DNA from: Gekko japonicus
Lineage: Eukaryota
DNA length: 64,000 bases
Direction: 5' to 3'
NCBI RefSeq assembly: GCF_001447785.1
Contig: NW_015166492.1
Coordinates: 196,795-260,794, forward strand
In this document: positions 8,871 to 63,837 of the stretch, in pieces
Position numbering within the stretch: position 1 is the first letter of the stretch
Layout of the letters: each line of letters starts with the position of its first letter
The notes under the pieces: generated by a model
The model's database searches: none
Seen by the model: only the letters and a program-made list of their open reading frames with translations
Told to the model about the DNA's origin: nothing
Made by a program: the position numbers and the translations under genes

Positions 8871-9076
8871 CAGTGTTCCCTCTAAGCTGAGTTAGTGTGA
8901 GCTAGCTCACAGTTTTTTAGCCTCCGGCTCACACATTTTTGTCCTAGCTCAGGAAGGAGGGCTCCAGAGCAGACTAATGTATGCAGCAGCCAAATCGCTC
9001 GCTCACAACTTTAATGCCGGTAGCTCACAAAGTAGAATTTTTGCTCACAAGACTCCACAGCTTAGTGGGAACATTG
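8871..9076 (+). mobile_element. hAT MITE family A
   Basis: Same TIRs; 8-bp TSD GTAAAAAC. Confidence 0.9.
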
Positions 9077-10315
9077 GTAAAAACAGATGGGTAACAAAAA
9101 TGGTATCTCTCTGGACTGATTACAGGCATTTCCTCAAGCTGACACAGGTAATACCTAACAGTAAAGGGTTTCAGTCCCTATGCTGAGAACAATCTAAGTT
9201 GCTTCTTGTGCACAGGGGTGACGCAGGACACTTCATCAGGATGACACGAATTCTATGCAACTCAAACACTTGCAAATTCCTAACACACCATTTTCTTCTC
9301 CCGTGGTTGATCTCAAATAAACTCCTGCAATGTCTCTTTCATCCAACTAATGCTGGAAAATCCACATGACAAATCTACTGATTCAATGGAAGTTGCTTAG
9401 AACCAAACAGAAATAACATTTGAAGACTACTACTAGTATTTCAATGGTAGTAATTCCAGAGGAGTAGCTGTGTTTGTCTACTGCAACAAGAATAAACAGG
9501 AGTCTGGGGACACCTGAAAGGCCAACAAGTTTTTATTCTAGCATCAGCTTTCAGAGACTTCAGCCCGATTTGTTCCCGTCCTACAGAAATTTATGCTAGA
9601 ATAAAACAGGTTCATCTTCGAGATGCCACTGGACTCTAGGTTATCTCTGCAAGCTTCTGAGTAACATACGGCTCTTTGTCAGGCAGTGAGTGACTGCCGC
9701 AAATCCTTTCCCAAGCTTAGCCCAGCTGCCTCTGTTATGCTGCATTGTTAAACAAAGCAATCCGAACAAACTCCAAGGGCGCACCTCTAAGACAGCTGCT
9801 AAGGGCCAATTGCCTCCTTACTTTTTTGGGTGCCTTCTAACACATATTTCAGGCTTCCACTGCAGAATCTAGGGGGCAGGAGCCCATGTTCCCTCTAAGC
9901 TGTGGAGCCCGGTGAGCAAAAGCTATCCCAGACGAACCAGGAATGGCACAAGCTTGCATGTATTTGATGGAATCATTCTGATGTCATTGAGAACCATCCC
10001 AGCTGAACCCCATTCCCCCCTTCTCTGTCCCTCTGACACGGCTCTGCTCCAAAAAGCCTCGTTCCCGCACCATCCCCCCCCTCTCCAAAGCTTGTCTCGT
10101 ACATTAATTACCCATCTGCCACGTTGGCATTCACAACCTCTTCCACCACCCCCACTCCAAACACCTGTCTCGTCTTGCTAGTTTTCATCACAGCCCTTCC
10201 TCGCTCAGGTGCTCAGCATGCCCCACTGCTACAAACCAGACCCCTCTACTCCCAAACTAACCCCCACTTCTCACAGTCCCCCACACAACCCCATATCACC
10301 CTTCTCCTATGTAGC

Positions 10316-10600
10316 CTCCACATTCTGCCGCTTACACTCCCTCTCATCAGCAGCACCCTAGAGGCTTTTCTTCTTGGCTTGAGTCCCTAGATCCCATCTC
10401 ATCCGAAATCCTATTGCTCCAGGGGAGAATGATGCACCCCACTGATCCTCACATTCTGCCGCTTACACTCCCTCTCATCACTTACACTCCCTCTCATCGG
10501 CAGCACCCTAGAGACTTTTCTTTTTGGCTTGAGTCCCTAGTTCCCATTTCATCCGAAATCCTATTGATCCGGGGGAGAATGATGCACCCCACTGATCCTC
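10316..10600. repeat. Local tandem duplication (~130-150 bp unit, 2 copies)
   Basis: CACATTCTGCCGCTTACACTCCCTCTCATC...GGGGAGAATGATGCACCCCACTGATCCTC occurs twice. Confidence 0.8.
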
Positions 10601-10947
10601 TCCCCACTCCCTCTTGGAAGTTCCCTCTGAAGCGCCTTCTTCCTCTCCCCACATTGACCTACTGCTGCCATTTCACTTACACGTATACATAAAACCCATT
10701 TAAACACTTCCAAACCTGGGATTCACTCATTTTTATCTTGTGTGATCTACTTAGGTTGGTTGTGGGTTGTTGTTGTTTTTTTAATCAGACTCCCTCACCA
10801 TCCACTGCTTCATTTTATATTTATCAGCCAAGAATGCAGACCCAAGGTCTTGTAAGGGTTGAGGCTTGACTAGCCTGCGTTAAACAATCTCACTTCCAAA
10901 CATAACCCATCCTAGCAAAACTTACAGAATGAACACACTTTCTGAAC

Positions 10948-11117
10948 AAAGTGCGAGTCTGGTAGCACCTTTTAAGACCAACAAAGTTTTGTTCAAGGTA
11001 TAAGCTTTTGTCTGCAAGCACACTTCACTGTATCTGAAAAAGTGTGCTTCTGCAAAAAAAGCTCATACCTTGAATAAAACTTTGTTGGTCTTAAAGGTGC
11101 TGCTGGACTCAGACTTT
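10948..11117. mobile_element. Palindromic Penelope-like remnant
   Basis: Inverted arms GAGTCTGGTAGCACCTTTTAAGACCAACAAAGTTTT / AAAACTTTGTTGGTCTTAAAGGTGCTGCTGGACTC. Related copies at ~3025-3200, 3410-3530, 9460-9645 and 54056-54393. Confidence 0.6.
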
Positions 11118-11213
11118 GTTCTGCTGCTTTGACATTTTCTTTCTGCTATTTACCTTCATTATCTTCCCCCTCCTGCTGCAAGCACCCCAGCACCACCCTA
11201 GTGAGATTGTAAT

Positions 11214-11420
11214 CAATGCTTCCCTCTAAGCTGTGGAGTCTTGTGAGCAAAAATTCTACTTTGTGAGCTACTGACGTTAAAGTTGTGAGCGAGCGATTTG
11301 GCTACTGCATAAATTACTTTGCTCTGGAGCCATCCTTCCTGAGCTAAGGCAAAAATCTGTGAGCTGGAGGCTAAAACACTGTGACCTAGCTCACACTAAC
11401 TCAGCTTAGAGGGAACACTG
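11214..11420 (-). mobile_element. hAT MITE family A
   Basis: Reverse copy; TSD ATTGTAAT/ATTGCAAT. Confidence 0.9.
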
Positions 11421-12049
11421 ATTGCAATGTCCCTGGGGCAGGGACTGCTTTTCTTGCTTGTTATACTGCAAGGCATCCTACCCAACTCATAACAACATAT
11501 GGCATTATAGCTCTTTACCACAAAATTCATTCCAGCATGAGCTTTTGTGAGATTAACCAGTGGTCCGCTGTTAAAAAATCACAGTCTTTACTCACTTAAT
11601 GGATGCCCCACTGGTCTTCCCCAAGATTCTCGCATTCTCCACTTTATCCTCACAACAACCCTGTGTGGTAAATTAGGCGGATAATATGGGACTCACTCCT
11701 GGTCACCCAGCAAGCTTCCATGGACAGAGAGGAGATTTGAATCTGGGTTTTACAAATCCTAGTCTGACACTAACCACTCCACCACACCACCCCAGCTCCA
11801 CTTTCTGCTCTCTAGGCTAAGGGTGGGCTGGCCTCAGTCTTGCCTGGCACACTGTACTGAAAAGGCTAAAATCCCCCAGGAGCCACTGACCTGCTTCCAA
11901 CATAATCAACCCAAGGATACCTCCTGGAGATCCCTAAACAATTATTGATTATTAAGCCGTCTATCGTCCATCTGCCTTCCTCACTGAGACTCAATGTAAT
12001 GAGATCTTGAGTACTTTGAGCCAGAAATCATAGGAAACCACCTTGCTGG

Positions 12050-12910
12050 ATCAGACCAAGAGCCACGGAGCCCAGCACCGCTGGCAAGAACCCCAAACTC
12101 ACCAGAACACTAGCCATTGTCTTCCTTCTGCTCGCCCACGCTTGATGCCGCGGCGTCTCCCAGCCCGCCGACCCCCTTCTTCTCTCCCCCCCCTCCCGCC
12201 TCACCTGTTGCCGGTCTCCATCTTTCTGGCGGCGCTCCAGGGCGCGCTCCACCGCCTCCCTTTGCGTTTCGCGCAGAAGATCCAGCTCCAAAAGCCCCGC
12301 GAGGCTGGCTTGGAGGCGCTCCCCAATGCGGAGCCGCTCGTTGCCGGACCACAGCGAGGGAGGCACGGCTCTGCGGGCCATGACCCTCCCGGGATGGGGG
12401 TCCGCTCCCCCCACCTCCTGCCTCTCGGAGAGAGGAGGCTGCATGCGCCTCGGGGGAGCGCAGGCAGCTGCCGGCAAGCTACCCTTGGAGGACTCTCCGT
12501 AAAGAGAACCCGGAGGAAAAGCGGGCCGGGGGAGGCACCTCGACAGATTCCGTACAATGCCGAAGACCGCGTTGCCGGTACGGAAAAGGCGCCTCCGAGC
12601 CCCGACTTCTGCAACTCTCCGCCTGGGCAAGAAGAAAACAGCACTTCAGACAAAGGGGACGGGTTTGAAAGAGTCACGTGGAGACAGGTTCTCTTCCCCC
12701 CTCTGCCCAGTTCCCCGGTTTCTGATTGGCTCAGGCTAGATAAAACAAAACATTCTTAAAGAGCGAAATTCCCTACAAAACAGAGCGAGCGAGCTAATAA
12801 ACCAGATGGCCTTGACATTCCAGGGTCGTTTCATTTGAGCCGCTTTCTAAACGTGGGTTTTTAAATAAATAAATATAAATATATATATCTTCAAGGGGCT
12901 GATTCAAAGA
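12050..12910. promoter_or_regulatory. CpG island and DACT promoter, with E-box GTCACGTG (12673-12680), CCAAT box (ATTGG 12725-12729) and TCF/LEF-like TTCAAAG (12903-12909)
   Basis: High CpG/GC density around and upstream of the DACT start codon. Motifs read directly from sequence; function untested. Confidence 0.6.
12205..12381 (-). CDS. DACT4: Dapper/DACT-family gene, first coding exon (probably DACT4); later exons not found in window
   Basis: ATG at 12381 gives MARRAVPPSLWSGNERLRIGERLQASLAGLLELDLLRETQREAVERALERRQKDGDRQQ, matching the Dapper N-terminal motif (ERL-x-A-x-LAGL-x-EL-xx-LR-xx-Q). Ends at a strong CAG|GTGAGG donor, phase 0, inside a CpG island. The DACT4 paralog call is inferred from synteny with ZBTB3. 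Confidence 0.8.
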
Positions 12911-14356: not shown

Positions 14357-14396
14357 ATGGACCCGCGCCCTCCATTCAAAAACAGAAAACCCTTTG
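14357..14396 (+). CDS. MAP1LC3C-like: MAP1LC3C-like (ATG8 family) exon 1: MDPRPPFKNRKPF
   Basis: aagATGG start, PFKxRK motif of LC3 N-termini, G|GTAAGT donor (phase 1), 40 nt. Confidence 0.9.
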
Positions 14397-14618
14397 GTAA
14401 GTACCGACTCTATTTCCCGCCCGTGTAAACGCGCCTAACTTTGTGCTGTAAATTGTCGTTTCCAGCTAGGAGCGCTCCCTGCTGGTAAGAGAGGCTGCAG
14501 TGAATTGTTGGGGGCTTTAATATGTTTTCTGTGTTCTTTTTTTGCTTGTTAAGACAGAACTAACTTGAAAGATGAAGTCCTTTTCTGTTTCTGAAGGGAG
14601 TTTACTTTTCTGTTCTAG

Positions 14619-14674
14619 CCTGTAGGAAGAGTGAAGTGGCTTCTATTCGTCTCAAGTTTCCCAACAAACGACCG
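14619..14674 (+). CDS. MAP1LC3C-like: MAP1LC3C-like exon 2: (A)CRKSEVASIRLKFPNKRP
   Basis: Polypyrimidine tract with TAG acceptor, CCG|GTATGT donor, 56 nt. Aligns to LC3C IRQEEVAGIRAKFPNKIP. Confidence 0.92.
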
Positions 14675-14856
14675 GTATGTAGGTTTTGGGGGTATTCTGT
14701 TTTGCAGTGGTGAGTAATAATGTGGAGTGGGAGCAGGGGGCAGAGATGCTGCTCTGTTAAACGTGTTGGTAGAAGACCCAGCGATTATATGGAACTTTTT
14801 TCTTCAATCTTCTCTGCTTAACTATGTGCACTGGACACCCCCCCCCCATTTCAGTT

Positions 14857-18100: not shown

Positions 18101-19158
18101 TCTCCTGCCTGTTGTCCCTTGCTGCATGGACAAGATGGAGTCCCTGGGTCGAAGTTCAGTCCTTCATGGCTCGTGTCCGTTCAAGGAGCTGCTCTGAATG
18201 GAAGAAGAGCTGCTCCAAATAGAAGAGAGATTGTTCTGTGTCCTGAGCGTTTATAGTCTACCCTAGGAGTCCATCTTACTTTGAGGTCATTTTGATCCTC
18301 CTGCTTCAAGAAGAATAAAATAAATTGTACCAGTTTGGCTGTTCACTTCTCTGTCCCTTCGGGTGTCACCTTCCAGTAGACTATGGGGTGGTAAACCATT
18401 GTCCCGCTTTGGCCAGAGCCATTAGCATAACCAAGAACTTGAGTGCTCTCTGCGTTGAGCTGGATGGCTGCTTCCCCCAACCCTCTCCTTTCTGCCACCT
18501 GAGTGCAAGTGGGTTCCTGAGCACATACAGAATGCAGTCACAGTGCCTGAAATATTGGTGTGAAAATTCTGGGTGGGGAGTATTTCTCCCCACTCCTTAC
18601 TGGAACTGTGCTACTGTTCCCCTTCAGAATGTGGGTGGTGACCCTTCTTAAAGTCCTCTCTTGTATTTTAAGCTCTCTAGATGATTTCAGGAGAGCTTTC
18701 AATGGAACTTGTTCCCTTCATTCCCCCTCCTCCTCTGTTTTGTTCACCTTCAAACCTGAACTGAATTGGGGTATTTTATCTGACAAATGAAATACTACGA
18801 ATACACTGTAGGTAGGGATGGGCACTGTAAAATCCACCCAGAAGCTTGACAACTCTACCTTGACACTCATTGTTTGTACCTGATGCTGATACCTAAAACT
18901 GAGTTGTAATAATTGGTACAAACACAGGGCTAGGCAAATAGGGAGGTAATTGCTGACTGTTGGGGGGCTTAAGTGATGTTGTCCTTGCTGACAATATACC
19001 TGTGAGGCCTGGTGGGGGCAAACAGAGGGCTCTTTTCATTCCCTGCTTGTTTGAGCATTTTAGAGGCAAGTGATGCTCCACTGTTGGAGCCAATGTATGG
19101 CTGAGTTTGGACCACTGCCCTTACCAAGCCAGCTCCATGTTTCTTCCTATTTTCGTAG

Positions 19159-19265
19159 GTGATCCTGGAGCGCTATCCCAAGGAGAAAATATTGCCGGTA
19201 ATGAACAAGGTCAAATTCCTTGTTCCGGAAGACCTCACTATGGGCCAGTTTGTCTCGATTATCCG
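19159..19265 (+). CDS. MAP1LC3C-like: MAP1LC3C-like exon 3: VILERYPKEKILPVMNKVKFLVPEDLTMGQFVSIIR
   Basis: TAG acceptor, CG|GTAAGA donor, 107 nt. Aligns to LC3C VVVERYPRETFLPPLDKTKFLVPQELTMTQFLSIIR. Confidence 0.95.
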
Positions 19266-19870
19266 GTAAGATCAGTTTTTCTGTAGCATTAATCCTGCTC
19301 TGCAGGGGTGGTGTTTTTAGATGATGCAAGTTGTTTTGACTTTTGCATTTGTCCACTGTTACCCTGCACTTAGCCCGCCTAAGGTCTGAGTACAAGGTTA
19401 GGCTATAAACCTAAGCCTCTTTCATTGGTGAGAAATCCTCTTGATTCACTTTTCCTTCCTCTGGGCTTTGGCAAGTCCACAGCAGTTACCTCAAGATCTC
19501 CCCTTTGGGAAACACTGTTGGCTTACGGTATTGTTATAATTCGACTTGGACCTGAGAAGCGAGTACATGCACCACTTTTTTTTGCTGTCAAGTCACAGCT
19601 GACTTATGGCAACCCTGTAGGGTTTTCAAGGCTAGAGATGTTCAGAGTTGGTTTGCCATTGCCTGCCTCCGTGTTGTGACACTAATATTCCTTGGTGGTC
19701 TCCCATCCAAATAGTGACCAGGCTCAACCCTGCTTAGCTTCCAAGATCGGGTTATCCTGGGCTATCCAGGTCAAGGCATCTCAGGTCCAACTCAGATCTC
19801 TCCTCTGCGGTTAACATATTGGGTGGTCTTAGCCAAGTGGCTGTTTCCCCTAAACTGCAGCTCTCTCATC

Positions 19871-20075
19871 CAGTGTTCCTTCTAAGCTGAGTTAGTGTCA
19901 GCTAGCTCAGTTTTTTTAGCCACTGGCTCACACATTTTTGTCTTAGCTCAGGAAGGATGGCTCCAGAGCAAACTAATTTAAGCAGTAGCCAAATTGCTCG
20001 CTCACAACCTTAATGCCAGTAGCTCACAAAGTAGAATTTTTGCTCACAAGACTCCACAGCTTAGAGGGAGCATTG
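19871..20075 (+). mobile_element. hAT MITE family A (LC3-like intron 3)
   Basis: TIRs; TSD CTCTCATC/CTCCCATC. Confidence 0.9.
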
Positions 20076-20523
20076 CTCCCATCCTATTATGAACAGAACA
20101 CCGGCCTGCCACGTGGGATTGTTGGAAAGGTAACTTAAAATTGTGTGTGTGTGTGTATCCATAAACCCTAAGTATTTCTGTGCTTTGCTTTTGGAAGATT
20201 GTGTTTACTTGGGCTTTACTATTTTATCCTGACAAAATGAGATGTCCAGAGGGCCCTAGCAGGTTGTAGAAACAAGGGGGTTAAATATTTGCGACCTGGT
20301 TTAAGCTCCAGTTACATTAATGGGATTTAAGAGAGTCTGGTGTTGTGGGGAGGGAAATATCTCATTACACACAGGGAGGGGTGAGAGAATTTGTATGATC
20401 AGAAGCCTTGGTTTATATATTTTACAGACTGCCTTTCTCACTGAGACTCCAGGCATATTACAGAATAAAAACAATGTACTCTTTGCGGCATAAGACATGA
20501 TATTTCTTACTCTCTTCCCTCAG

Positions 20524-20686
20524 AAACAGAATGTCCATTGGCTCCACACAAGCCTTCTACTTCCTGGCTGATAATAACCGCAGTATGGTTAACATGTCAG
20601 CCACCATGTCTGAAGTGTACTCGAGGTACAAAGACGAAGACGGCTTCCTGTACATGACCTACGCCTCGCAGGAGACGTTTGGCTGA
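20524..20686 (+). CDS. MAP1LC3C-like: MAP1LC3C-like exon 4: NRMSIGSTQAFYFLADNNRSMVNMSATMSEVYSRYKDEDGFLYMTYASQETFG-stop
   Basis: CAG acceptor and hallmark KDEDGFLYMTYASQETFG. The four exons total 366 nt = 121 aa plus TGA with consistent phases. Confidence 0.95.
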
Positions 20687-22750
20687 CAGCACTTGAGCTG
20701 TTCAGGGGGTCATGATTTGGTTGAAATCGGTTTCTGCCTCTCTGACCACACCACCCACCTTCTCTTAAAAACTGGATTGCGTTCTTCTCAGAGTGCCTGG
20801 CTGGCTCTACGCTCCTCTGCTGTGTCACAAAAAAACCCTTAGAGATCTTTCTGAGGGGGGGGGGCTGTCTTGACAATGGACTGAGTAGATATTTTGGGTT
20901 GCCTCTTGGGTGATGGGTATTAGGGAGGAGATCCCATGTTCTAAAAGGATCGCAGTGTTTCCATTCAGAGCCCTTTGTAGACTCTCTAGAGTCCTCCTTT
21001 GCTGATCTGGGCCCTGATTCGTCAAGGGGTCACTTGGGCACTGTTGATGAGGTGGCTGTAGCTATGGCTCTCTCTCGAGTAGCATGGATCAAGCTGGCCT
21101 TAGGTGACAGCTTTTAATTGACATTCAAGGGTGGGTTTTAGGAGAGGCTTGTTATAGGTGGTGGTTCTCACAAAATGGAGAAAGAGCCCTTCTTACATCA
21201 TGCATCATTGCTGCTTTCAGGAAACTGCCTCCTCCCTGGGGTAGGTAGTGGTTTCTTGTGAACTTTCACGACACTTGAATGCTTCTATTCCCTTTTAAAG
21301 ATGCAAATCCTGCATGAGGGTGGAGGGGATGCTTCACTGCGGACTGGGGAGTTTAGAGAGCATCTTCACTTTGGAGAAGGAATGAATGTGGATTGGTTAA
21401 AAAGCAGTATTGGAATAATATTGGAAAGAGACTTGCTTTTGTCAACCAACCACTTTTAAGACCACAATTGTAACGTGTCCACTTCTGAGTAGCNNNNNNN
21501 NNNNNNNNNNNNNNNNNNNNNNNNNNNNNNNNNNNNNNNNNNNNNNNNNNNNNNNNGAGGACACCTTCCCCTTTTTCTGCTGTTTCTTAACTGGCAGCGA
21601 TGTATGCTGTTCAGGGTCTACGCTTGAGGGATCATAGCAGGGGCCGTACAAGCCAGTGCCTTGCCAAGATCTTAAAATAAGCTTTAAGGAACATCACACA
21701 CTGGTTTAAAGCAGAGCTCTTTGGAAGATTTTAATTCCCTACCAGGCCTAGTAAGCTCTGCTTTCTACAGTTCTGGTCTAGAGTCGTTTTGCTAGTCCCC
21801 AACACTATTCACTCGGCTTTTAAGATTTGCATTCCTTTTTTGTGTGATTGGTTTTAATGTAGTTGGAAATATTTGGCTTGCTATAGTGTAAGTTAGAAAT
21901 GGCATGCTTGGTCTTTTAGTATGGGATCAGGAGGAAGTGGCAGTGGCAAAATACCTGGGTCCTCTCTTGCTGCACAGCCAGAGACTGGAAGCTAAAAGAG
22001 GGAGTTCTCCTTCTGGACCAACCTATAGCTGAAGCTTTAGATGAGCTGTCTACAACAGAAGGATGGGTCTTTGCTGCCAGTGCGTTGGAGGGGAAGGGGC
22101 CTGAAGTTGGGAAGAAAAGCCCTCGTGGCTTATATGGGATAGGAACTGCACCCATTTTTATGACCTAATATAGTACGTGAAGGGACATTCTTGCTGTCAA
22201 ATGGGGTGATAGAAAGTTCCTTCGCTGCAGCTCACAGGTGCTTTTCTTTGTAATTAGTAGCCTGGTAACTTAGATTAGGACCATGGTTTGGGGGGGGGTG
22301 TTCTGACCCTCTCCCCATGCTGTTTTTTGGCTCTGCTCTATACTTCATTGAGGTAATGATTAAGGCATGCTGTATGATATCAGTATCTGCTTCAGCTGGG
22401 TGAACAATAGCTCTGTGGGGTTGTTTCAGTTGGGGAAACAGCAAGGTGGTATGGGAGAGGTGTAAGGTTTTAAATCCCCCCTTTAGGCATCTGCAGGTGC
22501 TCTCAATGAAGGAGGAAGTGCTTAGAGTGTCCCCGTATCTTGCTTTGGCCCCTTCACCACAAGCATATTTTAAGGGAAGATTGATTGTGGTGGTGTTCCC
22601 TCACAAGAGAATGCTAAACGCTTCTGGGATAGCTCACAGTGTGCTGAGGGTCCTTTGACATCTTGGGAAGGCTGAACAGACAGCTTATCTGCGCTTGGGC
22701 CTCATTGGGGTGAAATGCATTATGGGTATTATGTGGCTTAATCTCGGTCA

Positions 22751-29200: not shown

Positions 29201-30598
29201 CTACGAGGGATTCTCCACATCCTGTTTGCAACGTTTGGCTGCCAGGTCTGCGTTGTGTGCCTTCCGGATGTGCCGGTAGAGGTCTCCGGACTGGGTGTAG
29301 CTGCGCATGCAGTAGCGGCATTCGTAGGGGCGCTCCCGTGTGTGGACCGTGGCATGGCGCCGGAGCGTGTAGGAGCACGAGAAGGTCTTTCCGCATGTCT
29401 TACAAGTGGGCATGTCCTCTGTGAAGATGCCAAAGTTAGGGTGAACCTCATAGTCCTGTAGATACATCTGCTCGTGCAGAGGTGGAATCGCCATGTTGGA
29501 GAAACTTTGCCCGCTGGGCACAGGGATCATATGATAGGGCATGGGCTCCTGAGACAGGAAGGTACCGTCTGACGATACTTCCTCTAGCCCACCAGGCTCT
29601 GGAAAGTTGTCCAGATGGCGGCTGCAGCCTCCAGCTGACCCTGCCTCCACAGTGGGCCGCTGAAAGACACTCTCCAGCCTCTCCTCTGGGTTCTGCCCCT
29701 CCAGCTGCTCGACTGTGTCTGGCTCCTCATCGGAGATCACAATGGCTTCCATTTTGACTTTGATGGAGGGCCTGTTTGGCTCCTTTTGGCAAAATCCACT
29801 GACGCTGCCTTCCCGCTGTTCCACGTACTTCGCCGGAGCAGTGTCCACACTGGAAGGCCCCTCAGCAATGTTCCCCAGAGGAAAACAGCTGTGTGAGATG
29901 GTTTCGGTGGAACTGCTGGGGCTGGAGAGGGAGATGTCAATGATGGCTGGTGGGAGGGGTCTGGTTGGGGGAAGGGCTTGTGGGGAATCACCTTCCATGC
30001 CGGGCTGGGTGGTGTCCGCGACATCCAGCGTGGAGGCCAGCAGCTCATCAGAACCAACTTTCTCCACTCCCTTCCACTCCTCAGTGCTTTTCTTCTGTGC
30101 TTCGCAAGGCTGAGCGGGTGGGGGGGGCAACGACTGTGCCGCAGGGGCCAGCGGCTGGCACTTGGAGGTGCTGGGTACAAGTTCTGAACTGGCCGGGGAG
30201 TCCTCCTCCTTCTTAGTACTGTCCGCTTCAGCCAGAGCCCGGGCCTGCAGTTTCTTCTTGCACACCTTCACAATGTCGTTCATGTGCAGGTAGCTGGCAG
30301 CAGCCAGGACGTCCTCCACCGGAGTGTCATTGAAGGAGAGGCCGCCTTGGTACATGAATTCCAGGAGCAGACCAAACGCTGGGGCAGTGACGATCTCATT
30401 GTTGATGCACACCAAGTCCCCCTTGTCCAGCCCTTCCTTGTAGAACATGTGGAAGAAGGCACTGCACGAGGCGAGCACGGCTCGATGGGCCACGAACTGG
30501 GTGTTGCCCACCAGCACCGTGCAGTCGCAAAGGAAGCCATCGTGTTGCTGATCCCGCAGGCTCCGCAGCAGGTTCTTGCTGTGGTCTGGGAAATCCAT
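29201..30598 (-). CDS. ZBTB3: Zinc finger and BTB domain-containing protein 3 (465 aa from MDFPDHS)
   Basis: BTB domain [28 protein letters not shown]...[28 protein letters not shown] and exactly two C2H2 fingers ([21 protein letters not shown]; [22 protein letters not shown]), as in ZBTB3. An acceptor starts the exon at 30649, so the ORF-track extension to 30763 is intronic. Confidence 0.95.
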
Positions 30599-32636
30599 GC
30601 TGGCGGCCCTTTCAGGATTGTGGAGACGCCAGTGGCATACCTTTACACCCTTGGGATACAAGAAAAAGAAGGGAGGGGGCACAGAGAACTTAGTAACTTT
30701 ACGGCAAGGGCTTTGAAAGGTTGGATTTTCAGCCTTTGCGTTACGTTCTGGAATGCAGGGCAAGGTGAACTGTTAGGTTATACCGTGTTTCCCCGAAAAT
30801 ACGACACCTAGGTTATATTATTGGTCTGTCAAGCCCAAATTATCACCTCTGACTGGCAGCAGGTCTCCAGAGCAGTTTTCCAAACAAGGCTACCTGAGAG
30901 GCTTTAAAAATGACCTGGGGGCCTTTCTGGGACAGCACCCTCACCTCTGCTGTCTGGGGCTCTACCATCTACCTTCAAGCGACCAGCCTCTGCCTGCTGC
31001 CACTTGCAGGGCAGAAAGGTAGAATTCCACCTAGAGATTTCTGGCTCCAATCCTACATCTCTTTCATTTGGGGCAGGACACCCTCTTTGACCCAAACAGC
31101 TGTCAAGCTAGACAGCTGATGCCAAGGCCTTTCTCCTCCCAAATCCCTCCACAAATCTCACCCCCAAACAGTCGGCATAACTTGAGCACCCTTCCAAATG
31201 AGCCCAGGCTGTTCCCAGTACCTGTGTGCCTGCCTTTGATCTTAAGCACAAATGCATGCTGTGGGTTCTCTTTATTTTGATTTCTGCTGTCAGGTCTGTG
31301 GGAACTCCACCCCCCACTACGTCCTTTATCAGAATGCTATTTTTCAAGTACCAATTCACCCAGATTGTGCCCCCAACAAGAATGCCCCTTACTCTAAACT
31401 CCTCTTACCAGACTCCTCCCTACTGCCCAACCCTTCCACTCCTTAAAGATTCTCATTGTAATGAATCCTCACACCCACTTGCCTTCAGCATATTTTCTGG
31501 TGTGCTCCCAAATACTTCTGGCCTCTTATGTTCCATTCCCCCACATAATTAATCTCTCCTCCTAAACCTGGGGCGTTCCCCCCCCCCGGTATTTGCATTT
31601 TTCTCTGCTTCTCCCATTATACCCCCCCCCCCAATGAAGACCCCCTTTACCAAACACTTGACTTCTACTTAGCTCACCCCTCCCCCACATTGACCCCCCC
31701 TTNNNNNNNNNNNNNNNNNNNNNNNNNNNNNNNNNNNNNNNNNNNNNNNNNNNNNNNNNNNNNNNNNNNNNNNNNNNNNNNNNNNNNNNNNNNNNNNNNN
31801 NNNNNNNNNNNNNNNNNNNNNNNNNNNNNNNNNNNNNNNNNNNNNNNNNNNNNNNNNNNNNNNNNNNNNNNNNNNNNNNNNNNNNNNNNNNNNNNNNNNN
31901 NNNNNNNNNNNNNNNNNNNNNNNNNNNNNNNNNNNNNNNNNNNNNNNNNNNNNNNNNNNNNNNNNNNNNNNNNNNNNNNNNNNNNNNNNNNNNNNNNNNN
32001 NNNNNNNNNNNNNNNNNNNNNNNNNNNNNNNNNNNNNNNNNNNNNNNNNNNNNNNNNNNNNNNNNNNNNNNNNNNNNNNNNNNNNNNNNNNNNNNNNNNN
32101 NNNGTAGAGGTAACGTCTCGGAGACTGAACAGCCCGTTTACTCTTAGCCTTTAGCATTGATTGGTGGAACTTCTTGAAACCCGCCTCCATAGAAAGAAGA
32201 GGAGGAGATTCGGTTACTATAGTTACTGGGAGTCGTGCTAAGACTGAGGAAAGGGTTGGTTGGGATACAGTCAAATCTTATCCTCAGTTATGCAAACACG
32301 TGTACTTGCTGAATATAACATAATATCTGAGTAGAGAAAAAACCCACACGAACCTTTATTATTATTTATATATATCTAGTACCTTTGTATCCCACTCAGG
32401 GTTAGTGTAGATGATTTTCCTTTCCCTTCCTCCATTTTATCCACACAAGAACCCAATGAGGTAGGATAGGCCGCAAAAGTGACGGTCCCAAGGTCACCCA
32501 GCAAGCTTCCAGGGCAGGTGGAAATTCTAATTTGGGTCTCCCTGATCCTAGTCTGACACGCTGGCCACTACATAATTGTGGCTTTTCATATTGTTATATT
32601 TTTTATTTCTTTATTTGGATTTGTATCCCACCTTCA

Positions 32637-36303: not shown

Positions 36304-36497
36304 CGACGCTCCCTCTAAGCTGTGGAATCTTGTGAGCAAAAATTCTACTTTGTGAGCTACTGGCATTAAAGTTGTGAGCGAGCGATTTAGCTGCTGCATA
36401 AATTACTTTGCTCTGGAGCCCTCCCTTCCTGAACGAAGACAAAAATGTGTGAGCTGGAGGCTAAAAAACTGTAAGCCAGCTCACACTAGGAACATTG
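36304..36497 (-). mobile_element. hAT MITE family A (internally deleted), just inside candidate PLD intron 1
   Basis: Sequence identity to the other family A copies. Confidence 0.85.
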
Positions 36498-39302: not shown

Positions 39303-39636
39303 TAGGGTTGCCAAATGGGCCCAGGGGGCGGGGAATCCCCCGCTTTGGAGGCCCAATTTCTGCCGNNNNNNNNNNNNNNNNNNNNNNNNNNNNNNNNNNN
39401 NNNNNNNNNNNNNNNNNNNNNNNNNNNNNNNNNNNNNNNNNNNNNNNNNNNNNNNNNNNNNNNNNNNNNNNNNNNNNNNNNNNNNNNNNNNNNNNNNNNN
39501 NNNNNNNNNNNNNNNNNNNNCAATGTCGCACGTCACTTCTGGTGACGTGCTGCTTCGTACGCGCGTGTCCAGCAACAACTCCCGGACCGCGGCGAGTCTC
39601 CCCTGCCACGAGGGGTAAGTCCACTTGGCAACCCTA
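39303..39636. mobile_element. CpG-rich hAT element (spans a gap) inserted in a Squam3-like SINE
   Basis: TAGGGTTGCCAA / TTGGCAACCCTA TIRs with 8-bp TSD CCCACCCA. Confidence 0.75.
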
Positions 39637-43738: not shown

Positions 43739-44048
43739 CTTCTCTAGCCAGCTTAGGGCCAAAGTAGACAAGACAATGTCCTTGTGGCCACTACAAAGAC
43801 TCCACAGCCCTTTGAAGTCATTTAAAAATGTCACAAGGTCCTGCAGCACAGTGCTTTTGTCCTCTCCCCCCTTTTCAAGTGCCAAAACAGCAAGGGAGGG
43901 GCTTGCAGCCATATGGGCACTTGATAAGGCGGGAGCAGGGCACAAGAGTTCCTTAGGCTGCTATGTTGTGGGGGTGATCACGATTGGACCCTTGCATAGG
44001 TTTGCCAGGTCCCCCTTGGCCACTGGTGGGGGAAGGGGGCGTTGCCAG

Positions 44049-44254
44049 CAATATTCCCTCTAAGCTGTGGAGTCTTGTGAGCAAAAATTCTGGTTTGTGA
44101 GCTTATGGCTTGAAAGTTGTGAGCGAGCGATTTGGCTGCTGCACAAGTCAGTTTGCTCTGGAGCCATCCTTCCTGAGCTGAGACAAAAATGTGTGAGCCG
44201 GAGGCTAACAAACTGTGAGCCAGCTCACACTAACTCAGCTTAGAGGGAACACTG
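44049..44254 (-). mobile_element. hAT MITE family A inserted into a family B MITE
   Basis: Perfect TSD GTTGCCAG. Confidence 0.9.
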
Positions 44255-49230: not shown

Positions 49231-49852
49231 CCCTCATGTTAAAATTACCAATTCATCTAGCCAATTTAAAATCAGGGTGATCAATGACTGATTCCAATGG
49301 GGACATCAAGAGTNNNNNNNNNNNNNNNNNNNNNNNNNNNNNNNNNNNNNNNNNNNNNNNNNNNNNNNNNNNNNNNNNNNNNNNNNNNNNNNNNNNNNNN
49401 NNNCTGCGAGGACAGATCTGCCCGGGTCCCCGCCCCCCCCCCCCCGAATAGCTAGCAATCCAAAACAGTCCAGTGGAGCCGGAGCGGTGGATGTTGCCTT
49501 CTGACACACTTCTGGTGATCTCAGGGTGTGTGGCATATGCAAATAAGTTATGCTAGTGAGTTATGCTAATGAGCTCCTGCACCTCTTTTCCTACAAAATG
49601 ACCCCTGCCCTCATGTTAAAATTACCAATTCATCTAGCCAATTTAAAATCAGGGTGATCAATGACTGATTCCAATGGGGACATCAAGAGTACCATTTGCG
49701 GGCTGTGTTTATCTCAGAATTCTGTCACTTCCACTTAAATCAGATTGGTCATAGAGTCCCTGTAGTCCCTTTGTCCCGCCACATCCAGGAGGACAGCTTG
49801 GGGAGGAAAGGGTTTGGGGTCTTTCTTGACACACTTCTATGTGCTTTCTCAG

Positions 49853-62751: not shown

Positions 62752-62879
62752 GTACCTCCAGGGTGGGGTGGGTGTGGGTCAAATGGGGGGGTTGGAGATG
62801 GCTCAGCGGAAGCGCCCTGCTAGAGGGGAGGCCAGCTGGAGCGAGAGAGGCCCTTTCTGCAGTGTTCTTTGTGTGGCAG

Positions 62880-63080
62880 GTCAAGGAGCTGGGTGCCGTC
62901 CTGTACAACTGCAGCTGCCTGGCTCAGGATCTGGGCCGGATCTTTGCCGTGTACAACATGCTGGGAGGAGAAGGGGCTTCCATCCCTGCAGCGTGGCCGG
63001 CTAGCGTTGCGGCAGAGTCCAGCCTGAACCGCCCCTTGAAGCTGCAGCTCAACGGCTCCAGTGCAGAAGTCTACATTTCC
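62880..63080 (+). CDS. PLD3/4-like exon: VKELGAVLYNCSCLAQDLGRIF...SAEVYIS (gene continues past window end)
   Basis: VKELG-xxx-YNCSCLA-x-DL motif; CAG acceptor, TCC|GTAAGC donor. Confidence 0.94.
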
Positions 63081-63463
63081 GTAAGCCTGGCCGTTGTGCC
63101 GCTCTCTTTGTTTCCCTTGAGCAGCAGGGAAGTTCTGGGGCAGGTCAGTTTCATTGCAAGGAAAGTGCCCAGGAAACAGGTTTTGTATTATCAGATTCTA
63201 CACTCGGGGCCGGCATCAGCGTACCCCGAGGTGGGGCAGCTGCCGGGGCCCATGGGTTGTGGTGGGACCCACTTCTGCTCCCTCCCTACTCGCGCATCTC
63301 CTCGGGTGCCGGCCCTGACGCCCTTCCACTGGCTGCTTTTGAGTGCTGTGTCACCTCTGCTCCCTGCCGCATGTGGGTGATGTACAAAGCATCAGCGTTC
63401 CCGGTGACCATGGCAGTGGCCCTCCTGGCTGCACCCACTAGGGTGGGCACCTGGGACTGCAGG

Positions 63464-63837
63464 CAGTGTTCCCTCTAAGCTGAGTTAGTGTGAGCTAGCC
63501 CATGGGTTTTTTTAGCCTCCGGCTCACACCTTTTTGTCTTCGTTCAGGAAGGAAGGCTCCAGAGCAAACCAGTGCTCCCTCTAAGCTGTGGAGTCTTGTG
63601 AGCAAAAATTCTGCTTTGTGCGCTACTGGCATTTAAAGTTGTGAGTGAGCGATTTGGCTGCTGCATAAGTTAGAGGCTTAAAAACTGTGGGCTAGCTCAC
63701 ACTAACTCAGCTTAGAGGGAACACTGGAGCAAAACTAGTTTATGCAGTAGCCAAATCGCTCGCTCCCAACTTTAATGCCAGTAGCTCACAAAGTAGGATT
63801 TTTGCTCACAAGACTCCACAGCTAAGAAGGAGCATTG
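63464..63837 (+). mobile_element. hAT MITE family A with a nested inverted family A copy (63570-63726)
   Basis: Outer TSD ACTGCAGG; inner TSD GAGCAAAC/GAGCAAAA. Confidence 0.9.

What the first reader, a model, noticed from the sequence alone, without database searches (positions are those of the whole stretch)
20524..20686. Vertebrate ATG8/LC3 paralog encoded with its C-terminal glycine already exposed (no ATG4 priming needed)
Seen: the spliced ORF ends ...TAC GCC TCG CAG GAG ACG TTT GGC TGA (YASQETFG-stop), with no residue after the conjugation Gly. Established: the human LC3/GABARAP proteins are made as pro-forms with one or more residues after this Gly (LC3C has a ~21-aa tail) and need ATG4 cleavage before ATG7/ATG3 lipidation. 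Pre-exposed Gly forms are known from some plant and apicomplexan ATG8s. Inference: this LC3C-like protein could be lipidated or protein-conjugated directly after synthesis, a separately regulated autophagy input that mammals lack. LC3C has Cys after the Gly, so a single TGY>TGA change could have made the stop; whether it is old or lineage-specific cannot be told here.
Basis: partly seen in the sequence, partly recalled or inferred. Interest (0 to 1): 0.82.

Follow-up and report, generated by a model that had tools for sequence, protein, structure and literature searches.

The report
Reptile LC3C-like gene ending at glycine
This gecko gene encodes an autophagy tag (an LC3C-like ATG8) that stops exactly at the glycine used for attachment; this state is shared by about 40 lizard, snake and turtle species, sits in an old gene copy not found in mammals or birds here, and is already in databases though not described in the papers searched.

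Summary
Window 20524-20686 (+) is the last of four coding exons of an ATG8/LC3 gene and reads ...YASQETFG-TGA. The exons have canonical splice sites and give 121 aa, identical to RefSeq XP_015267672.1, "MAP1LC3C-like [Gekko japonicus]".

It is not the ortholog of human MAP1LC3C. It belongs to a separate, ZBTB3-linked "LC3C-like" clade (support 100/99) that also holds lungfish and bichir copies. The same reptiles keep a canonical 143-aa LC3C with a long tail.

About 24 squamate and 19 turtle species end at Gly-stop, so the state probably predates the squamate-turtle split. There are two exceptions inside the clade: Paroedura picta (+RQH) and alligators (+15 aa). Both look like secondary read-through of a TGA stop, so the missing tail is long-lived but not obligatory.

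ATG8s with the glycine already exposed are known (C. elegans LGG-2, plant clade II, apicomplexans) and many invertebrate LC3s here also end at Gly. Engineered "Atg8-G" proteins are lipidated in ATG4-null human cells. Direct lipidation without ATG4 priming is therefore a sound inference, but untested. A special regulatory role is speculative.

The parts
14357..14396 (+). Coding exon 1: ATG at 14357, encodes MDPRPPFKNRKPF plus the first base of the Ala codon; donor G|GTAAGT at 14397
   Evidence: Sequence read. tblastn of the Gopherus protein P0151 (EPRAPFKQRKCF) hits 14360-14395. The frame closes with exon 2.
14619..14674 (+). Coding exon 2: (A)CRKSEVASIRLKFPNKRP; acceptor tag| ending at 14618, donor |gtatgt at 14675
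   Evidence: P0151 residues 21-40 align to 14618-14677.
19159..19265 (+). Coding exon 3: VILERYPKEKILPVMNKVKFLVPEDLTMGQFVSII plus two bases of an Arg codon; acceptor tag| at 19156-19158, donor |gtaaga at 19266
   Evidence: 75% identity to the turtle protein, E 5e-14.
20524..20686 (+). Coding exon 4, the finding itself: completes Arg, then NRMSIGSTQAFYFLADNNRSMVNMSATMSEVYSRYKDEDGFLYMTYASQETFG and the stop
20681..20686 (+). Conjugation glycine codon GGC (G121) directly followed by stop TGA. The next codons CAG CAC (Q, H) match the RQH tail of the Paroedura picta ortholog.
29201..30763 (-). Neighbouring single-exon ZBTB3 ortholog (BTB domain plus C2H2 fingers). It is the conserved linkage marker of this paralog.
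   Evidence: Pfam BTB 1.1e-25 plus zinc fingers. The named top hits are all ZBTB3, at 64-88% identity in squamates.

Best explanation
The finding is the last exon of the gecko copy of a reptile 'MAP1LC3C-like' gene (called LC3CL here). It is a four-exon, 121-aa member of the ATG8/LC3 ubiquitin-like family.

LC3CL is an old paralog of MAP1LC3C that lies next to ZBTB3. It is retained in bichir, lungfish, crocodilians, turtles and squamates. It was not found in birds, mammals or amphibians.

In the squamate-plus-turtle lineage the ORF ends exactly at the conjugation glycine, so the primary translation product already has the 'form I' C-terminus.

The LIR-docking residues, the UDS residues and the C-terminal YASQExFG motif are all conserved. 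The protein is therefore most likely activated by ATG7, passed to ATG3 and conjugated to membrane lipid without the ATG4 priming cut. ATG4 would be needed only for removal.

Shown: gene structure, family and clade membership, linkage, and conservation of Gly-stop with its exceptions. Inferred: conjugation without ATG4. Not supported: any special regulatory role. The two natural tail regains suggest that having or lacking a short tail is close to neutral.
For: - Sequence and family.
- Full gene model with canonical splice sites, equal to P0211/XP_015267672.1.
- Clade: a profile of 16 clade members scores squamate and turtle proteins at 216-252 bits and everything else at 211 bits or less.
- Tree on core columns only, tails excluded: LC3CL of reptiles, alligator, lungfish and bichir forms one clade at 100/99, apart from canonical LC3C.
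- The same species also hold a 143-aa canonical LC3C with a 17-18-aa tail (P0227, P0237, P0244, P0247).
- Gly-stop is present in all listed squamate and turtle members.
- Constraint: 56 invariant columns across 16 species, including K51, F52, L53, V54, P55, I66, I67, R68, R70, F79, L82 and Y114-ASQE-x-FG121.
- Fold: AF2 model with pLDDT 72.8 matches LC3A/B/C structures at TM 0.82-0.88. The extra residue D84 lies in the loop after strand 79-83.
- Linkage: ZBTB3 lies 8.5 kb downstream.
- Transcription elsewhere: a spliced exon 2-3-4 turtle contig of 1346 bp (P0265) and a Micrurus carvalhoi protein that starts with non-LC3 sequence before exon 3 (P0003).
- Mechanism: engineered Atg8-G forms are conjugated in ATG4-null human cells (10.1101/2020.12.17.422596). 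LGG-2 and plant clade II ATG8s are naturally Gly-exposed (PMC7615515).
Against:
- Conjugation was not tested.
- LC3CL evolves three to four times faster than canonical LC3C: lizard-turtle identity is 76-78% against 93%. In geckos the conserved LDKTK motif reads MNKVK, so constraint is relaxed.
- Paroedura picta (+RQH) and both alligators (+15 aa) carry tails within the clade, so the tail-less state is not essential.
- Absence from birds, mammals and amphibians rests on lists capped at 120 hits. It is 'not found', not proven absent.
Confidence: 0.8

Rival explanations
1. Nearly neutral tail loss. The gene is a working ATG8, but ending at Gly has no functional meaning. ATG4 priming is normally fast and constitutive, so a stop directly after Gly and a short tail are interchangeable and drift back and forth.
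For: - Tail state changes at least 5 times on a 50-sequence tree.
- A gecko (Paroedura, +RQH) and alligators (+15 aa) regained tails inside the clade.
- Lungfish and bichir copies have one-residue tails.
- 45 of 173 LC3-type hits, including sponges, echinoderms, hemichordates, molluscs and a frog copy, end at Gly.
Against: Gly-stop has persisted in about 43 sampled squamate and turtle species over a very long time, with only two reversals. That is more stable than a freely drifting character might be, although a stop codon is a small mutational target.
Confidence: 0.45
2. The protein acts mainly in unconjugated form, as a scaffold or LIR-binding adaptor, and the exposed Gly is incidental.
For: - The review PMC7615515 notes that unlipidated LGG-2 predominates in C. 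elegans embryo extracts although its Gly is exposed.
- The same review notes that unconjugated LC3C/GABARAP bind PCM1.
- The LDS and UDS residues are the most conserved part of the protein.
Against: The C-terminal YASQExFG motif and the terminal Gly itself are invariant in 16 of 16 aligned species. This points to constraint on the conjugation site.
Confidence: 0.12
3. Decaying or non-functional duplicate: the stop is one step of pseudogenisation, or a sequencing error.
For: Faster evolution than canonical LC3C. The gene was not found in birds and mammals. No RNA evidence for the gecko.
Against: - All four exons are intact with canonical splice sites.
- An identical or near-identical ORF length occurs in dozens of independent assemblies.
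- There are 56 invariant columns.
- A spliced transcript contig exists in a turtle (P0265).
Confidence: 0.03
4. The TGA is not the real end: it is recoded (selenocysteine or read-through), or alternative splicing adds a tail.
For: - The frame stays open for 51 codons after the TGA.
- Three UniRef-only models 'n=1' (Terrapene P0187, Podarcis P0200, Pelusios P0191) replace the last residue(s) with other C-terminal sequence.
Against: - No SECIS or any other Rfam match in 20500-21490 at E<=1.
- A 51-codon open run has a chance probability of about 0.09.
- There is no GT donor at the Gly codon in the window (GGC TGA).
- The NCBI-sourced models of the same or sister species end at Gly.
- Paroedura's tail stops after three codons.
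Confidence: 0.03

Closest known systems
Human/vertebrate MAP1LC3C (canonical LC3C)
   Same: Closest solved relative: exon 4 E 5.9e-19 and model 63-66% identity to PDB 2ncn, 3wam, 3vvw. Same fold, same four-exon layout, same LDS/UDS residues and the same ...MTYASQE(T/M)FG end.
   Different: Separate clade at 100/99. No C-terminal tail, against 17-21 residues. One extra residue after strand 79-83. Shorter N-terminus. Linked to ZBTB3 instead of PLD5. Evolves 3-4 times faster. The canonical gene coexists in the same reptiles.
C. elegans LGG-2 (LC3-type ATG8 with directly exposed Gly)
   Same: [quoted passage not shown] Structural match 5e6o with TM 0.84.
   Different: An invertebrate protein with 49% identity. 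The state arose independently. The reptile protein has not been studied experimentally.
Plant clade II ATG8s (Arabidopsis ATG8h/i) and apicomplexan ATG8
   Same: They lack any residue after the C-terminal Gly (PMC7615515 and PMC4206529, seen).
   Different: Distant lineages of the GABARAP/Atg8 type rather than LC3C type. Apicomplexan ATG8 works at the apicoplast.
Engineered Atg8-G (LC3/GABARAP truncated at the Gly)
   Same: Same C-terminus. These constructs are conjugated in cells lacking all ATG4s (10.1101/2020.12.17.422596).
   Different: Laboratory constructs. The gecko protein is the natural product of a conserved gene.
Lungfish and bichir 'MAP1LC3C-like' (XP_043931595.1, XP_028650330.1)
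   Same: Same paralog clade.
   Different: They keep a one-residue tail (T or A) and lack the one-residue insertion.

Membership tests
ATG8/LC3 family (Pfam PF02991) | Sequence match to the ATG8 profile | tested here: met
   Exon 4 alone: E 3e-14, 53.5 bits against a cut-off of 27. PF02991 is precomputed for P0211.
ATG8/LC3 family (Pfam PF02991) | Ubiquitin-like core preceded by N-terminal helices | tested here: met
   AF2 model with pLDDT 72.8 has H13-26, E30-37, E50-55, H60-70, E79-83, H96-103 and E110-116. Foldseek TM is 0.82-0.88 to LC3A/B/C.
ATG8/LC3 family (Pfam PF02991) | Conserved aromatic-Gly conjugation site at the C-terminus | tested here: met
   F120-G121 are invariant in 16 of 16 clade members...ETFG in the window.
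ATG8/LC3 family (Pfam PF02991) | LIR-docking and UDS residues (LC3B numbering K49, K51, F52, L53, I66, I67, R70, F79/F80, L82) | tested here: met
   K51, F52, L53, V54, P55, I66, I67, R68, R70, F79 and L82 are invariant. D48 is N and T50 is V in geckos.
ATG8/LC3 family (Pfam PF02991) | Made as a pro-form that ATG4 must cut (typical of the family, not strictly defining) | tested here: not met
   The stop codon directly follows the Gly. This is the point of the finding.
ATG8/LC3 family (Pfam PF02991) | ATG7/ATG3-dependent conjugation to PE | not testable with these tools
   Needs cell or in-vitro assays.
Canonical MAP1LC3C orthogroup | Groups with tetrapod MAP1LC3C in a tree | tested here: not met
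   It falls in a separate clade at 100/99 on core columns.
Canonical MAP1LC3C orthogroup | Long C-terminal peptide after the Gly | tested here: not met
Canonical MAP1LC3C orthogroup | Position next to PLD5 | tested here: not met
   The window has ZBTB3 and a PLD3/4-like exon instead. PLD5-LC3C adjacency is inferred from the fused bird model P0284 and from general knowledge of human 1q43.
ZBTB3-linked 'LC3C-like' paralog (LC3CL) | Clade membership | tested here: met
   Identical to the Gekko japonicus protein. Nested in geckos, then squamates, then reptiles plus lungfish and bichir.
ZBTB3-linked 'LC3C-like' paralog (LC3CL) | Linkage to ZBTB3 | tested here: met
   ZBTB3 ORF at 29201-30763 (-), 8.5 kb from the stop.
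ZBTB3-linked 'LC3C-like' paralog (LC3CL) | One-residue insertion after strand 79-83 (reptile subclade) | tested here: met
   FLADNN against LV-NN.
Naturally Gly-exposed ATG8s (LGG-2, AtATG8h/i, apicomplexan ATG8) | Stop codon immediately after the conjugation Gly | tested here: met
Naturally Gly-exposed ATG8s (LGG-2, AtATG8h/i, apicomplexan ATG8) | Conjugation without ATG4 processing | not testable with these tools
   Inferred from Atg8-G constructs.

The most novel reading that the evidence does not exclude
The tail-less state is adaptive. On this reading, non-avian reptiles keep a dedicated ATG8 paralog that enters ATG7/ATG3 conjugation (to lipid, or to proteins by 'ATG8ylation') independently of ATG4 priming. 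That would allow conjugation when ATG4 is inhibited, for example by oxidation or hypoxia in ectotherms. It would define an autophagy or CASM branch that mammals and birds lost.
Probability: 0.15. Interest if true: 0.65.

Novelty: new member of a known kind. Interest (0 to 1): 0.4.

Why it matters
Reviews usually state that all ATG8s are made as pro-forms needing ATG4 (for example the introduction of PMC7615515).

This gene shows that a whole vertebrate lineage carries an ATG8 that is born with the conjugation glycine exposed. The gene copy is uncharacterised and was not found in mammals or birds, which makes it easy to overlook.

It also offers a natural three-way comparison within one orthogroup: no tail (Gekko and most reptiles), +3 residues (Paroedura) and +15 residues (alligator). 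This could be used to test what priming by ATG4 contributes in vertebrate cells.

The value is limited for three reasons. Exposed-Gly ATG8s are known elsewhere. Engineered G-forms behave largely normally. The natural tail regains suggest the state may be nearly neutral.

Tried and rejected
- **The look-up of encoding contigs.** No DNA of other species could be fetched, so stop-codon identity elsewhere and dN/dS could not be computed.
- **The look-up of sequencing runs.** 20 runs from 10 studies of one coded organism hold 20400-21400, but none is on record as RNA. This is no expression evidence.
- **The search of earlier findings.** Nothing was returned.
- **First guess for exon 1.** An ATG at 12557 in the GC-rich stretch (MPKTALPVRKRR...) was rejected because no donor fits. 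tblastn then placed exon 1 at 14357.
- **Selenocysteine or read-through.** No SECIS or other Rfam match was found.
- **TGY>TGA origin.** Not supported by outgroup tails (T, A). It is untestable without DNA.
- **Papers.** Nothing was found on a reptile LC3C-like gene or on map1lc3cl evolution. PMC13020874 on ATG duplications does not treat it.
- **Complex prediction.** Not used, because no gecko ATG7, ATG3 or ATG4 sequences were in hand.
- **Joined model.** The four exons were joined once inside a local script, only to check the frame and compare with fetched proteins. The joined letters were never sent to a search or fold tool. The identical database protein P0211 was used instead, and the scratch file was deleted.

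Full report
**1. Observation**

Window 20524-20686 (+) follows a polypyrimidine tract and an AG acceptor. In the frame starting at 20525 it reads NRMSIGSTQAFYFLADNNRSMVNMSATMSEVYSRYKDEDGFLYMTYASQETFG and then TGA, with GGC at 20681-20683 and TGA at 20684-20686. This exon alone matches Pfam ATG8 at E 3e-14, covering the profile to its last position. Among solved structures it is closest to human LC3C (5.9e-19), ahead of LC3B and LC3A (about 2e-14). It has one extra residue relative to LC3C: FLADNN against LV-NN.

**2. Gene model**

tblastn with reptile relatives, plus direct reading, gave four coding exons with canonical splice sites:
- 14357-14396: ATG...TTT G|gtaagt
- 14619-14674: tag|CC TGT...CCG|gtatgt
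- 19159-19265: tag|GTG ATC...CG|gtaaga
- 20524-20686

An earlier guess for exon 1 in the GC-rich stretch near 12557 was dropped because no donor fits. The exons were joined once in a local script, only to check the frame. They give 366 nt and 121 codons, identical over all 121 residues to database protein P0211. P0211 is XP_015267672.1, 'PREDICTED: microtubule-associated proteins 1A/1B light chain 3C-like [Gekko japonicus]'. Searches used single exons by reference or P0211 by id.

The window therefore comes from Gekko japonicus or a very close relative. Gekko kuhli is 96% identical over the 115 core columns.

**3. It is a paralog, not LC3C itself**

The all-against-one HMMER search with exon 4 found its nearest relatives to be a Logan contig, a coral snake protein and turtle proteins. 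All of these end at Gly and share the extra residue.

The word search then showed that NCBI annotates a 121-aa 'LC3C-like' protein in many squamates and a 128-aa one in turtles. The same species also have a 143-aa 'MAP1LC3C' with a 17-18-residue tail, for example Podarcis P0198 against P0227 and Carettochelys P0190 against P0247.

A profile of 16 clade members separates the clade at 216-252 bits from everything else at 211 bits or less.

Maximum-likelihood trees place the squamate, turtle and alligator proteins together with the 'LC3C-like' proteins of lungfish and bichir. This holds with all columns and with the core only, tails removed. Support on the core-only tree is 100/99. Canonical LC3C of ray-finned fishes and of tetrapods form other groups. 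How these three groups relate to each other is not resolved.

**4. Linkage**

A 520-codon ORF lies 8.5 kb downstream on the minus strand (29201-30763). It has a BTB domain and C2H2 fingers. Every named top database hit is ZBTB3, at 64-88% identity in squamates and about 50-55% in mammals.

The two genes are therefore likely on one scaffold or chromosome in those species too.

An exon at 62763-63380 (+) matches the PLD3/PLD4 nuclease family: PLD3 at 6e-16 and PLD4 at 4.5e-10.

From general knowledge, human MAP1LC3C lies beside PLD5 at 1q43 and near ZBTB18 at 1q44, and ZBTB18 is a paralog of ZBTB3. A bird gene model also fuses PLD5 with LC3C (P0284).

The parallel arrangement (PLD-type gene, LC3C-type gene, ZBTB18/3-type gene) suggests that LC3C and LC3CL are duplicates from the early vertebrate genome duplications. 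This is an inference.

**5. How old and how constant is Gly-stop**

All listed squamate members end ...FG-stop. They cover geckos, a skink, a blue-tongue, a lacertid, a monitor, an agamid, a cordylid, an amphisbaenian, a boa, colubrids, elapids and vipers, about 24 species. All listed turtle members do too, including both side-necked and hidden-necked turtles, about 19 species. On established timetrees, which I cite from knowledge, the state therefore dates at least to the split of lepidosaurs from turtles plus archosaurs.

The outgroup copies carry one residue after the Gly: T in lungfish and A in bichir.

There are two exceptions inside the clade.
- Paroedura picta, nested among gekkonids in the tree, ends FG-RQH. 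The window's codons after the stop are CAG CAC (Q, H). The simplest reading is TGA changed to an Arg codon, with read-through to the next stop.
- Both alligator species and one Logan contig end FG-GAGPRLG(H/R)PSPAGA(T/A). A TGA-to-GGA change could produce this.

Both readings are inferences from protein sequence, because no DNA of other species could be fetched.

Three UniRef-only models (Terrapene, Podarcis, Pelusios) replace the last residue or residues with other sequence. NCBI-sourced models of the same or sister species end at Gly. I take the former for gene-build artefacts.

**6. Is it functional?**

Across 16 species, 56 alignment columns are invariant. They include the LIR-docking residues (K51, F52, L53, V54, P55, I66, I67, R68, R70), the UDS pair F79 and L82, and Y114-A-S-Q-E-x-F-G121. 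Gecko numbering equals LC3B numbering up to the insertion.

An AlphaFold2 model from this shallow alignment has pLDDT 72.8. It shows the LC3 fold, and Foldseek gives TM 0.82-0.88 to LC3A, LC3B and LC3C structures. The extra residue (D84) sits in the loop after strand 79-83.

The paralog evolves faster than canonical LC3C. Lizard-turtle identity is 76-78% against 93%, and lizard-snake is 78% against 96.5%. Geckos have MNKVK where most LC3s have LDKTK.

Evidence for transcription comes from other species. A 1346-bp Logan contig encodes turtle exons 2-3-4 joined without introns and ends at Gly (P0265). A Micrurus carvalhoi entry exists whose first 25 residues are not LC3-like, perhaps from an unspliced 5' end (P0003).

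For the gecko itself I have no RNA evidence.

**7. Mechanism**

From established knowledge, ATG4 exposes the Gly, ATG7 (E1) and ATG3 (E2) then conjugate it to PE, and ATG4 also removes it.

Engineered Atg8-G proteins, which end at the Gly, bypass ATG4 and are conjugated in cells lacking all ATG4s (10.1101/2020.12.17.422596).

Natural Gly-ended ATG8s are known in C. elegans (LGG-2) and in plant clade II (PMC7615515). Many invertebrate LC3 proteins in my hit lists also end at Gly, as does the second half of a Discoglossus tandem model.

The most likely reading is that gecko LC3CL is ready for ATG7 as soon as it is made, and needs ATG4 only for deconjugation.

Whether this has a regulatory meaning is open. 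The two tail regains and the frequent changes of tail state across animals (at least 5 on the 50-row tree) favour a nearly neutral character.

It is also worth noting that the long C-terminal peptide reported to be needed for selective LC3C autophagy in human cells (PMC8129795) has no counterpart here.

**8. Rivals checked**

- Sequencing error or pseudogene: contradicted by the intact structure and by cross-species agreement.
- Recoding of TGA: there is no SECIS or any Rfam match in 20500-21490 at E<=1. The 51-codon open frame after the stop has a chance probability of about 0.09.
- Alternative splicing from the last codons: there is no GT at the Gly codon in the window.

**9. Novelty**

The protein is already predicted and named 'LC3C-like' in RefSeq for dozens of reptiles.

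I found no paper in the held library that describes this paralog or its exposed glycine. A 2026 study of ATG gene duplications in vertebrates does not treat it (PMC13020874).

The kind, an ATG8 born with an exposed Gly, is known. A conserved vertebrate clade of it is, as far as I could search, an undescribed member.

**10. Limits**

- Absence of the paralog from birds, mammals and amphibians is 'not found among the best 120 hits of each search', not proof.
- The human chromosome positions and divergence times are from general knowledge, not from a tool.

Noticed in passing
window 62763-63380 (+): An exon matching the PLD3/PLD4 5'-3' exonuclease family (Pfam PLDc_3 6.8e-10; PLD3 6e-16, PLD4 4.5e-10) lies about 33 kb from ZBTB3. 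Together with LC3C-like and ZBTB3 it mirrors the human PLD5-MAP1LC3C-ZBTB18 neighbourhood, which hints at paralogous segments from the early vertebrate genome duplications. Which PLD gene it is was not settled.
   Followed up: partly
window 29201-30763 (-): Single-exon ZBTB3 ortholog (BTB plus C2H2 fingers). The best database hit is only 92% identical (a Logan protein) and no Gekko japonicus ZBTB3 was listed.
   Followed up: partly
proteins P0446 (Paroedura picta) and P0448/P0450 (Alligator mississippiensis): Within the otherwise Gly-stop clade these orthologs carry tails: RQH, and GAGPRLGHPSPAGAT. Both are compatible with single-base changes of a TGA stop (to CGA and to GGA). They form a natural series for testing what ATG4 priming adds.
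   Followed up: partly
protein P0153 (Discoglossus pictus, 266 aa): This frog gene model joins two LC3C-type units in tandem, and the second ends at Gly-stop. Both units group together on long branches outside the LC3CL clade; their link to canonical LC3C is weak and was lost on the core-only tree. This is probably two adjacent genes fused by the predictor.
   Followed up: no
proteins P0001, P0154-P0184 (Lepidoptera, about 247 aa): Butterflies and moths have proteins with two ATG8/LC3 domains in tandem. This is already described for Bombyx (PMC13658554, seen).
   Followed up: no
proteins P0267, P0269, P0270, P0273, P0291, P0292, P0298, P0305, P0309, P0317, P0320: LC3-type proteins of hemichordates, echinoderms, sponges, a nemertean, a mite, a clam and a rotifer relative also end exactly at the Gly. 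The exposed-Gly state is common in invertebrate LC3s.
   Followed up: partly
window 8896-9183, 19886-20089, 36323-36403, 44011-44088, 63517-63606: A short interspersed repeat recurs on both strands. Its translation repeatedly reads ...IFAHKTPQL(R/S)G... or ...GSHIFVLAQEG.LQS.... It is probably a SINE-type element and was not classified.
   Followed up: no
window 10315-10689 (+): Two direct copies of a roughly 100-bp unit (translated ...SSWLESLDPISSEILLLQGRMMHPTDP... twice) in a region of strongly negative GC skew (-0.31 over 10001-12000).
   Followed up: no
window 12000-12760: A GC-rich stretch with long open frames on both strands lies 1.6 kb upstream of exon 1. It could be a CpG-island promoter, a 5' non-coding exon of the LC3C-like gene, or part of a diverging neighbour. 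No Pfam match.
   Followed up: partly
window 21494-21556, 31703-32103, 39366-39520, 49314-49403: Four runs of N (assembly gaps or masked stretches). They were left untouched.
   Followed up: no
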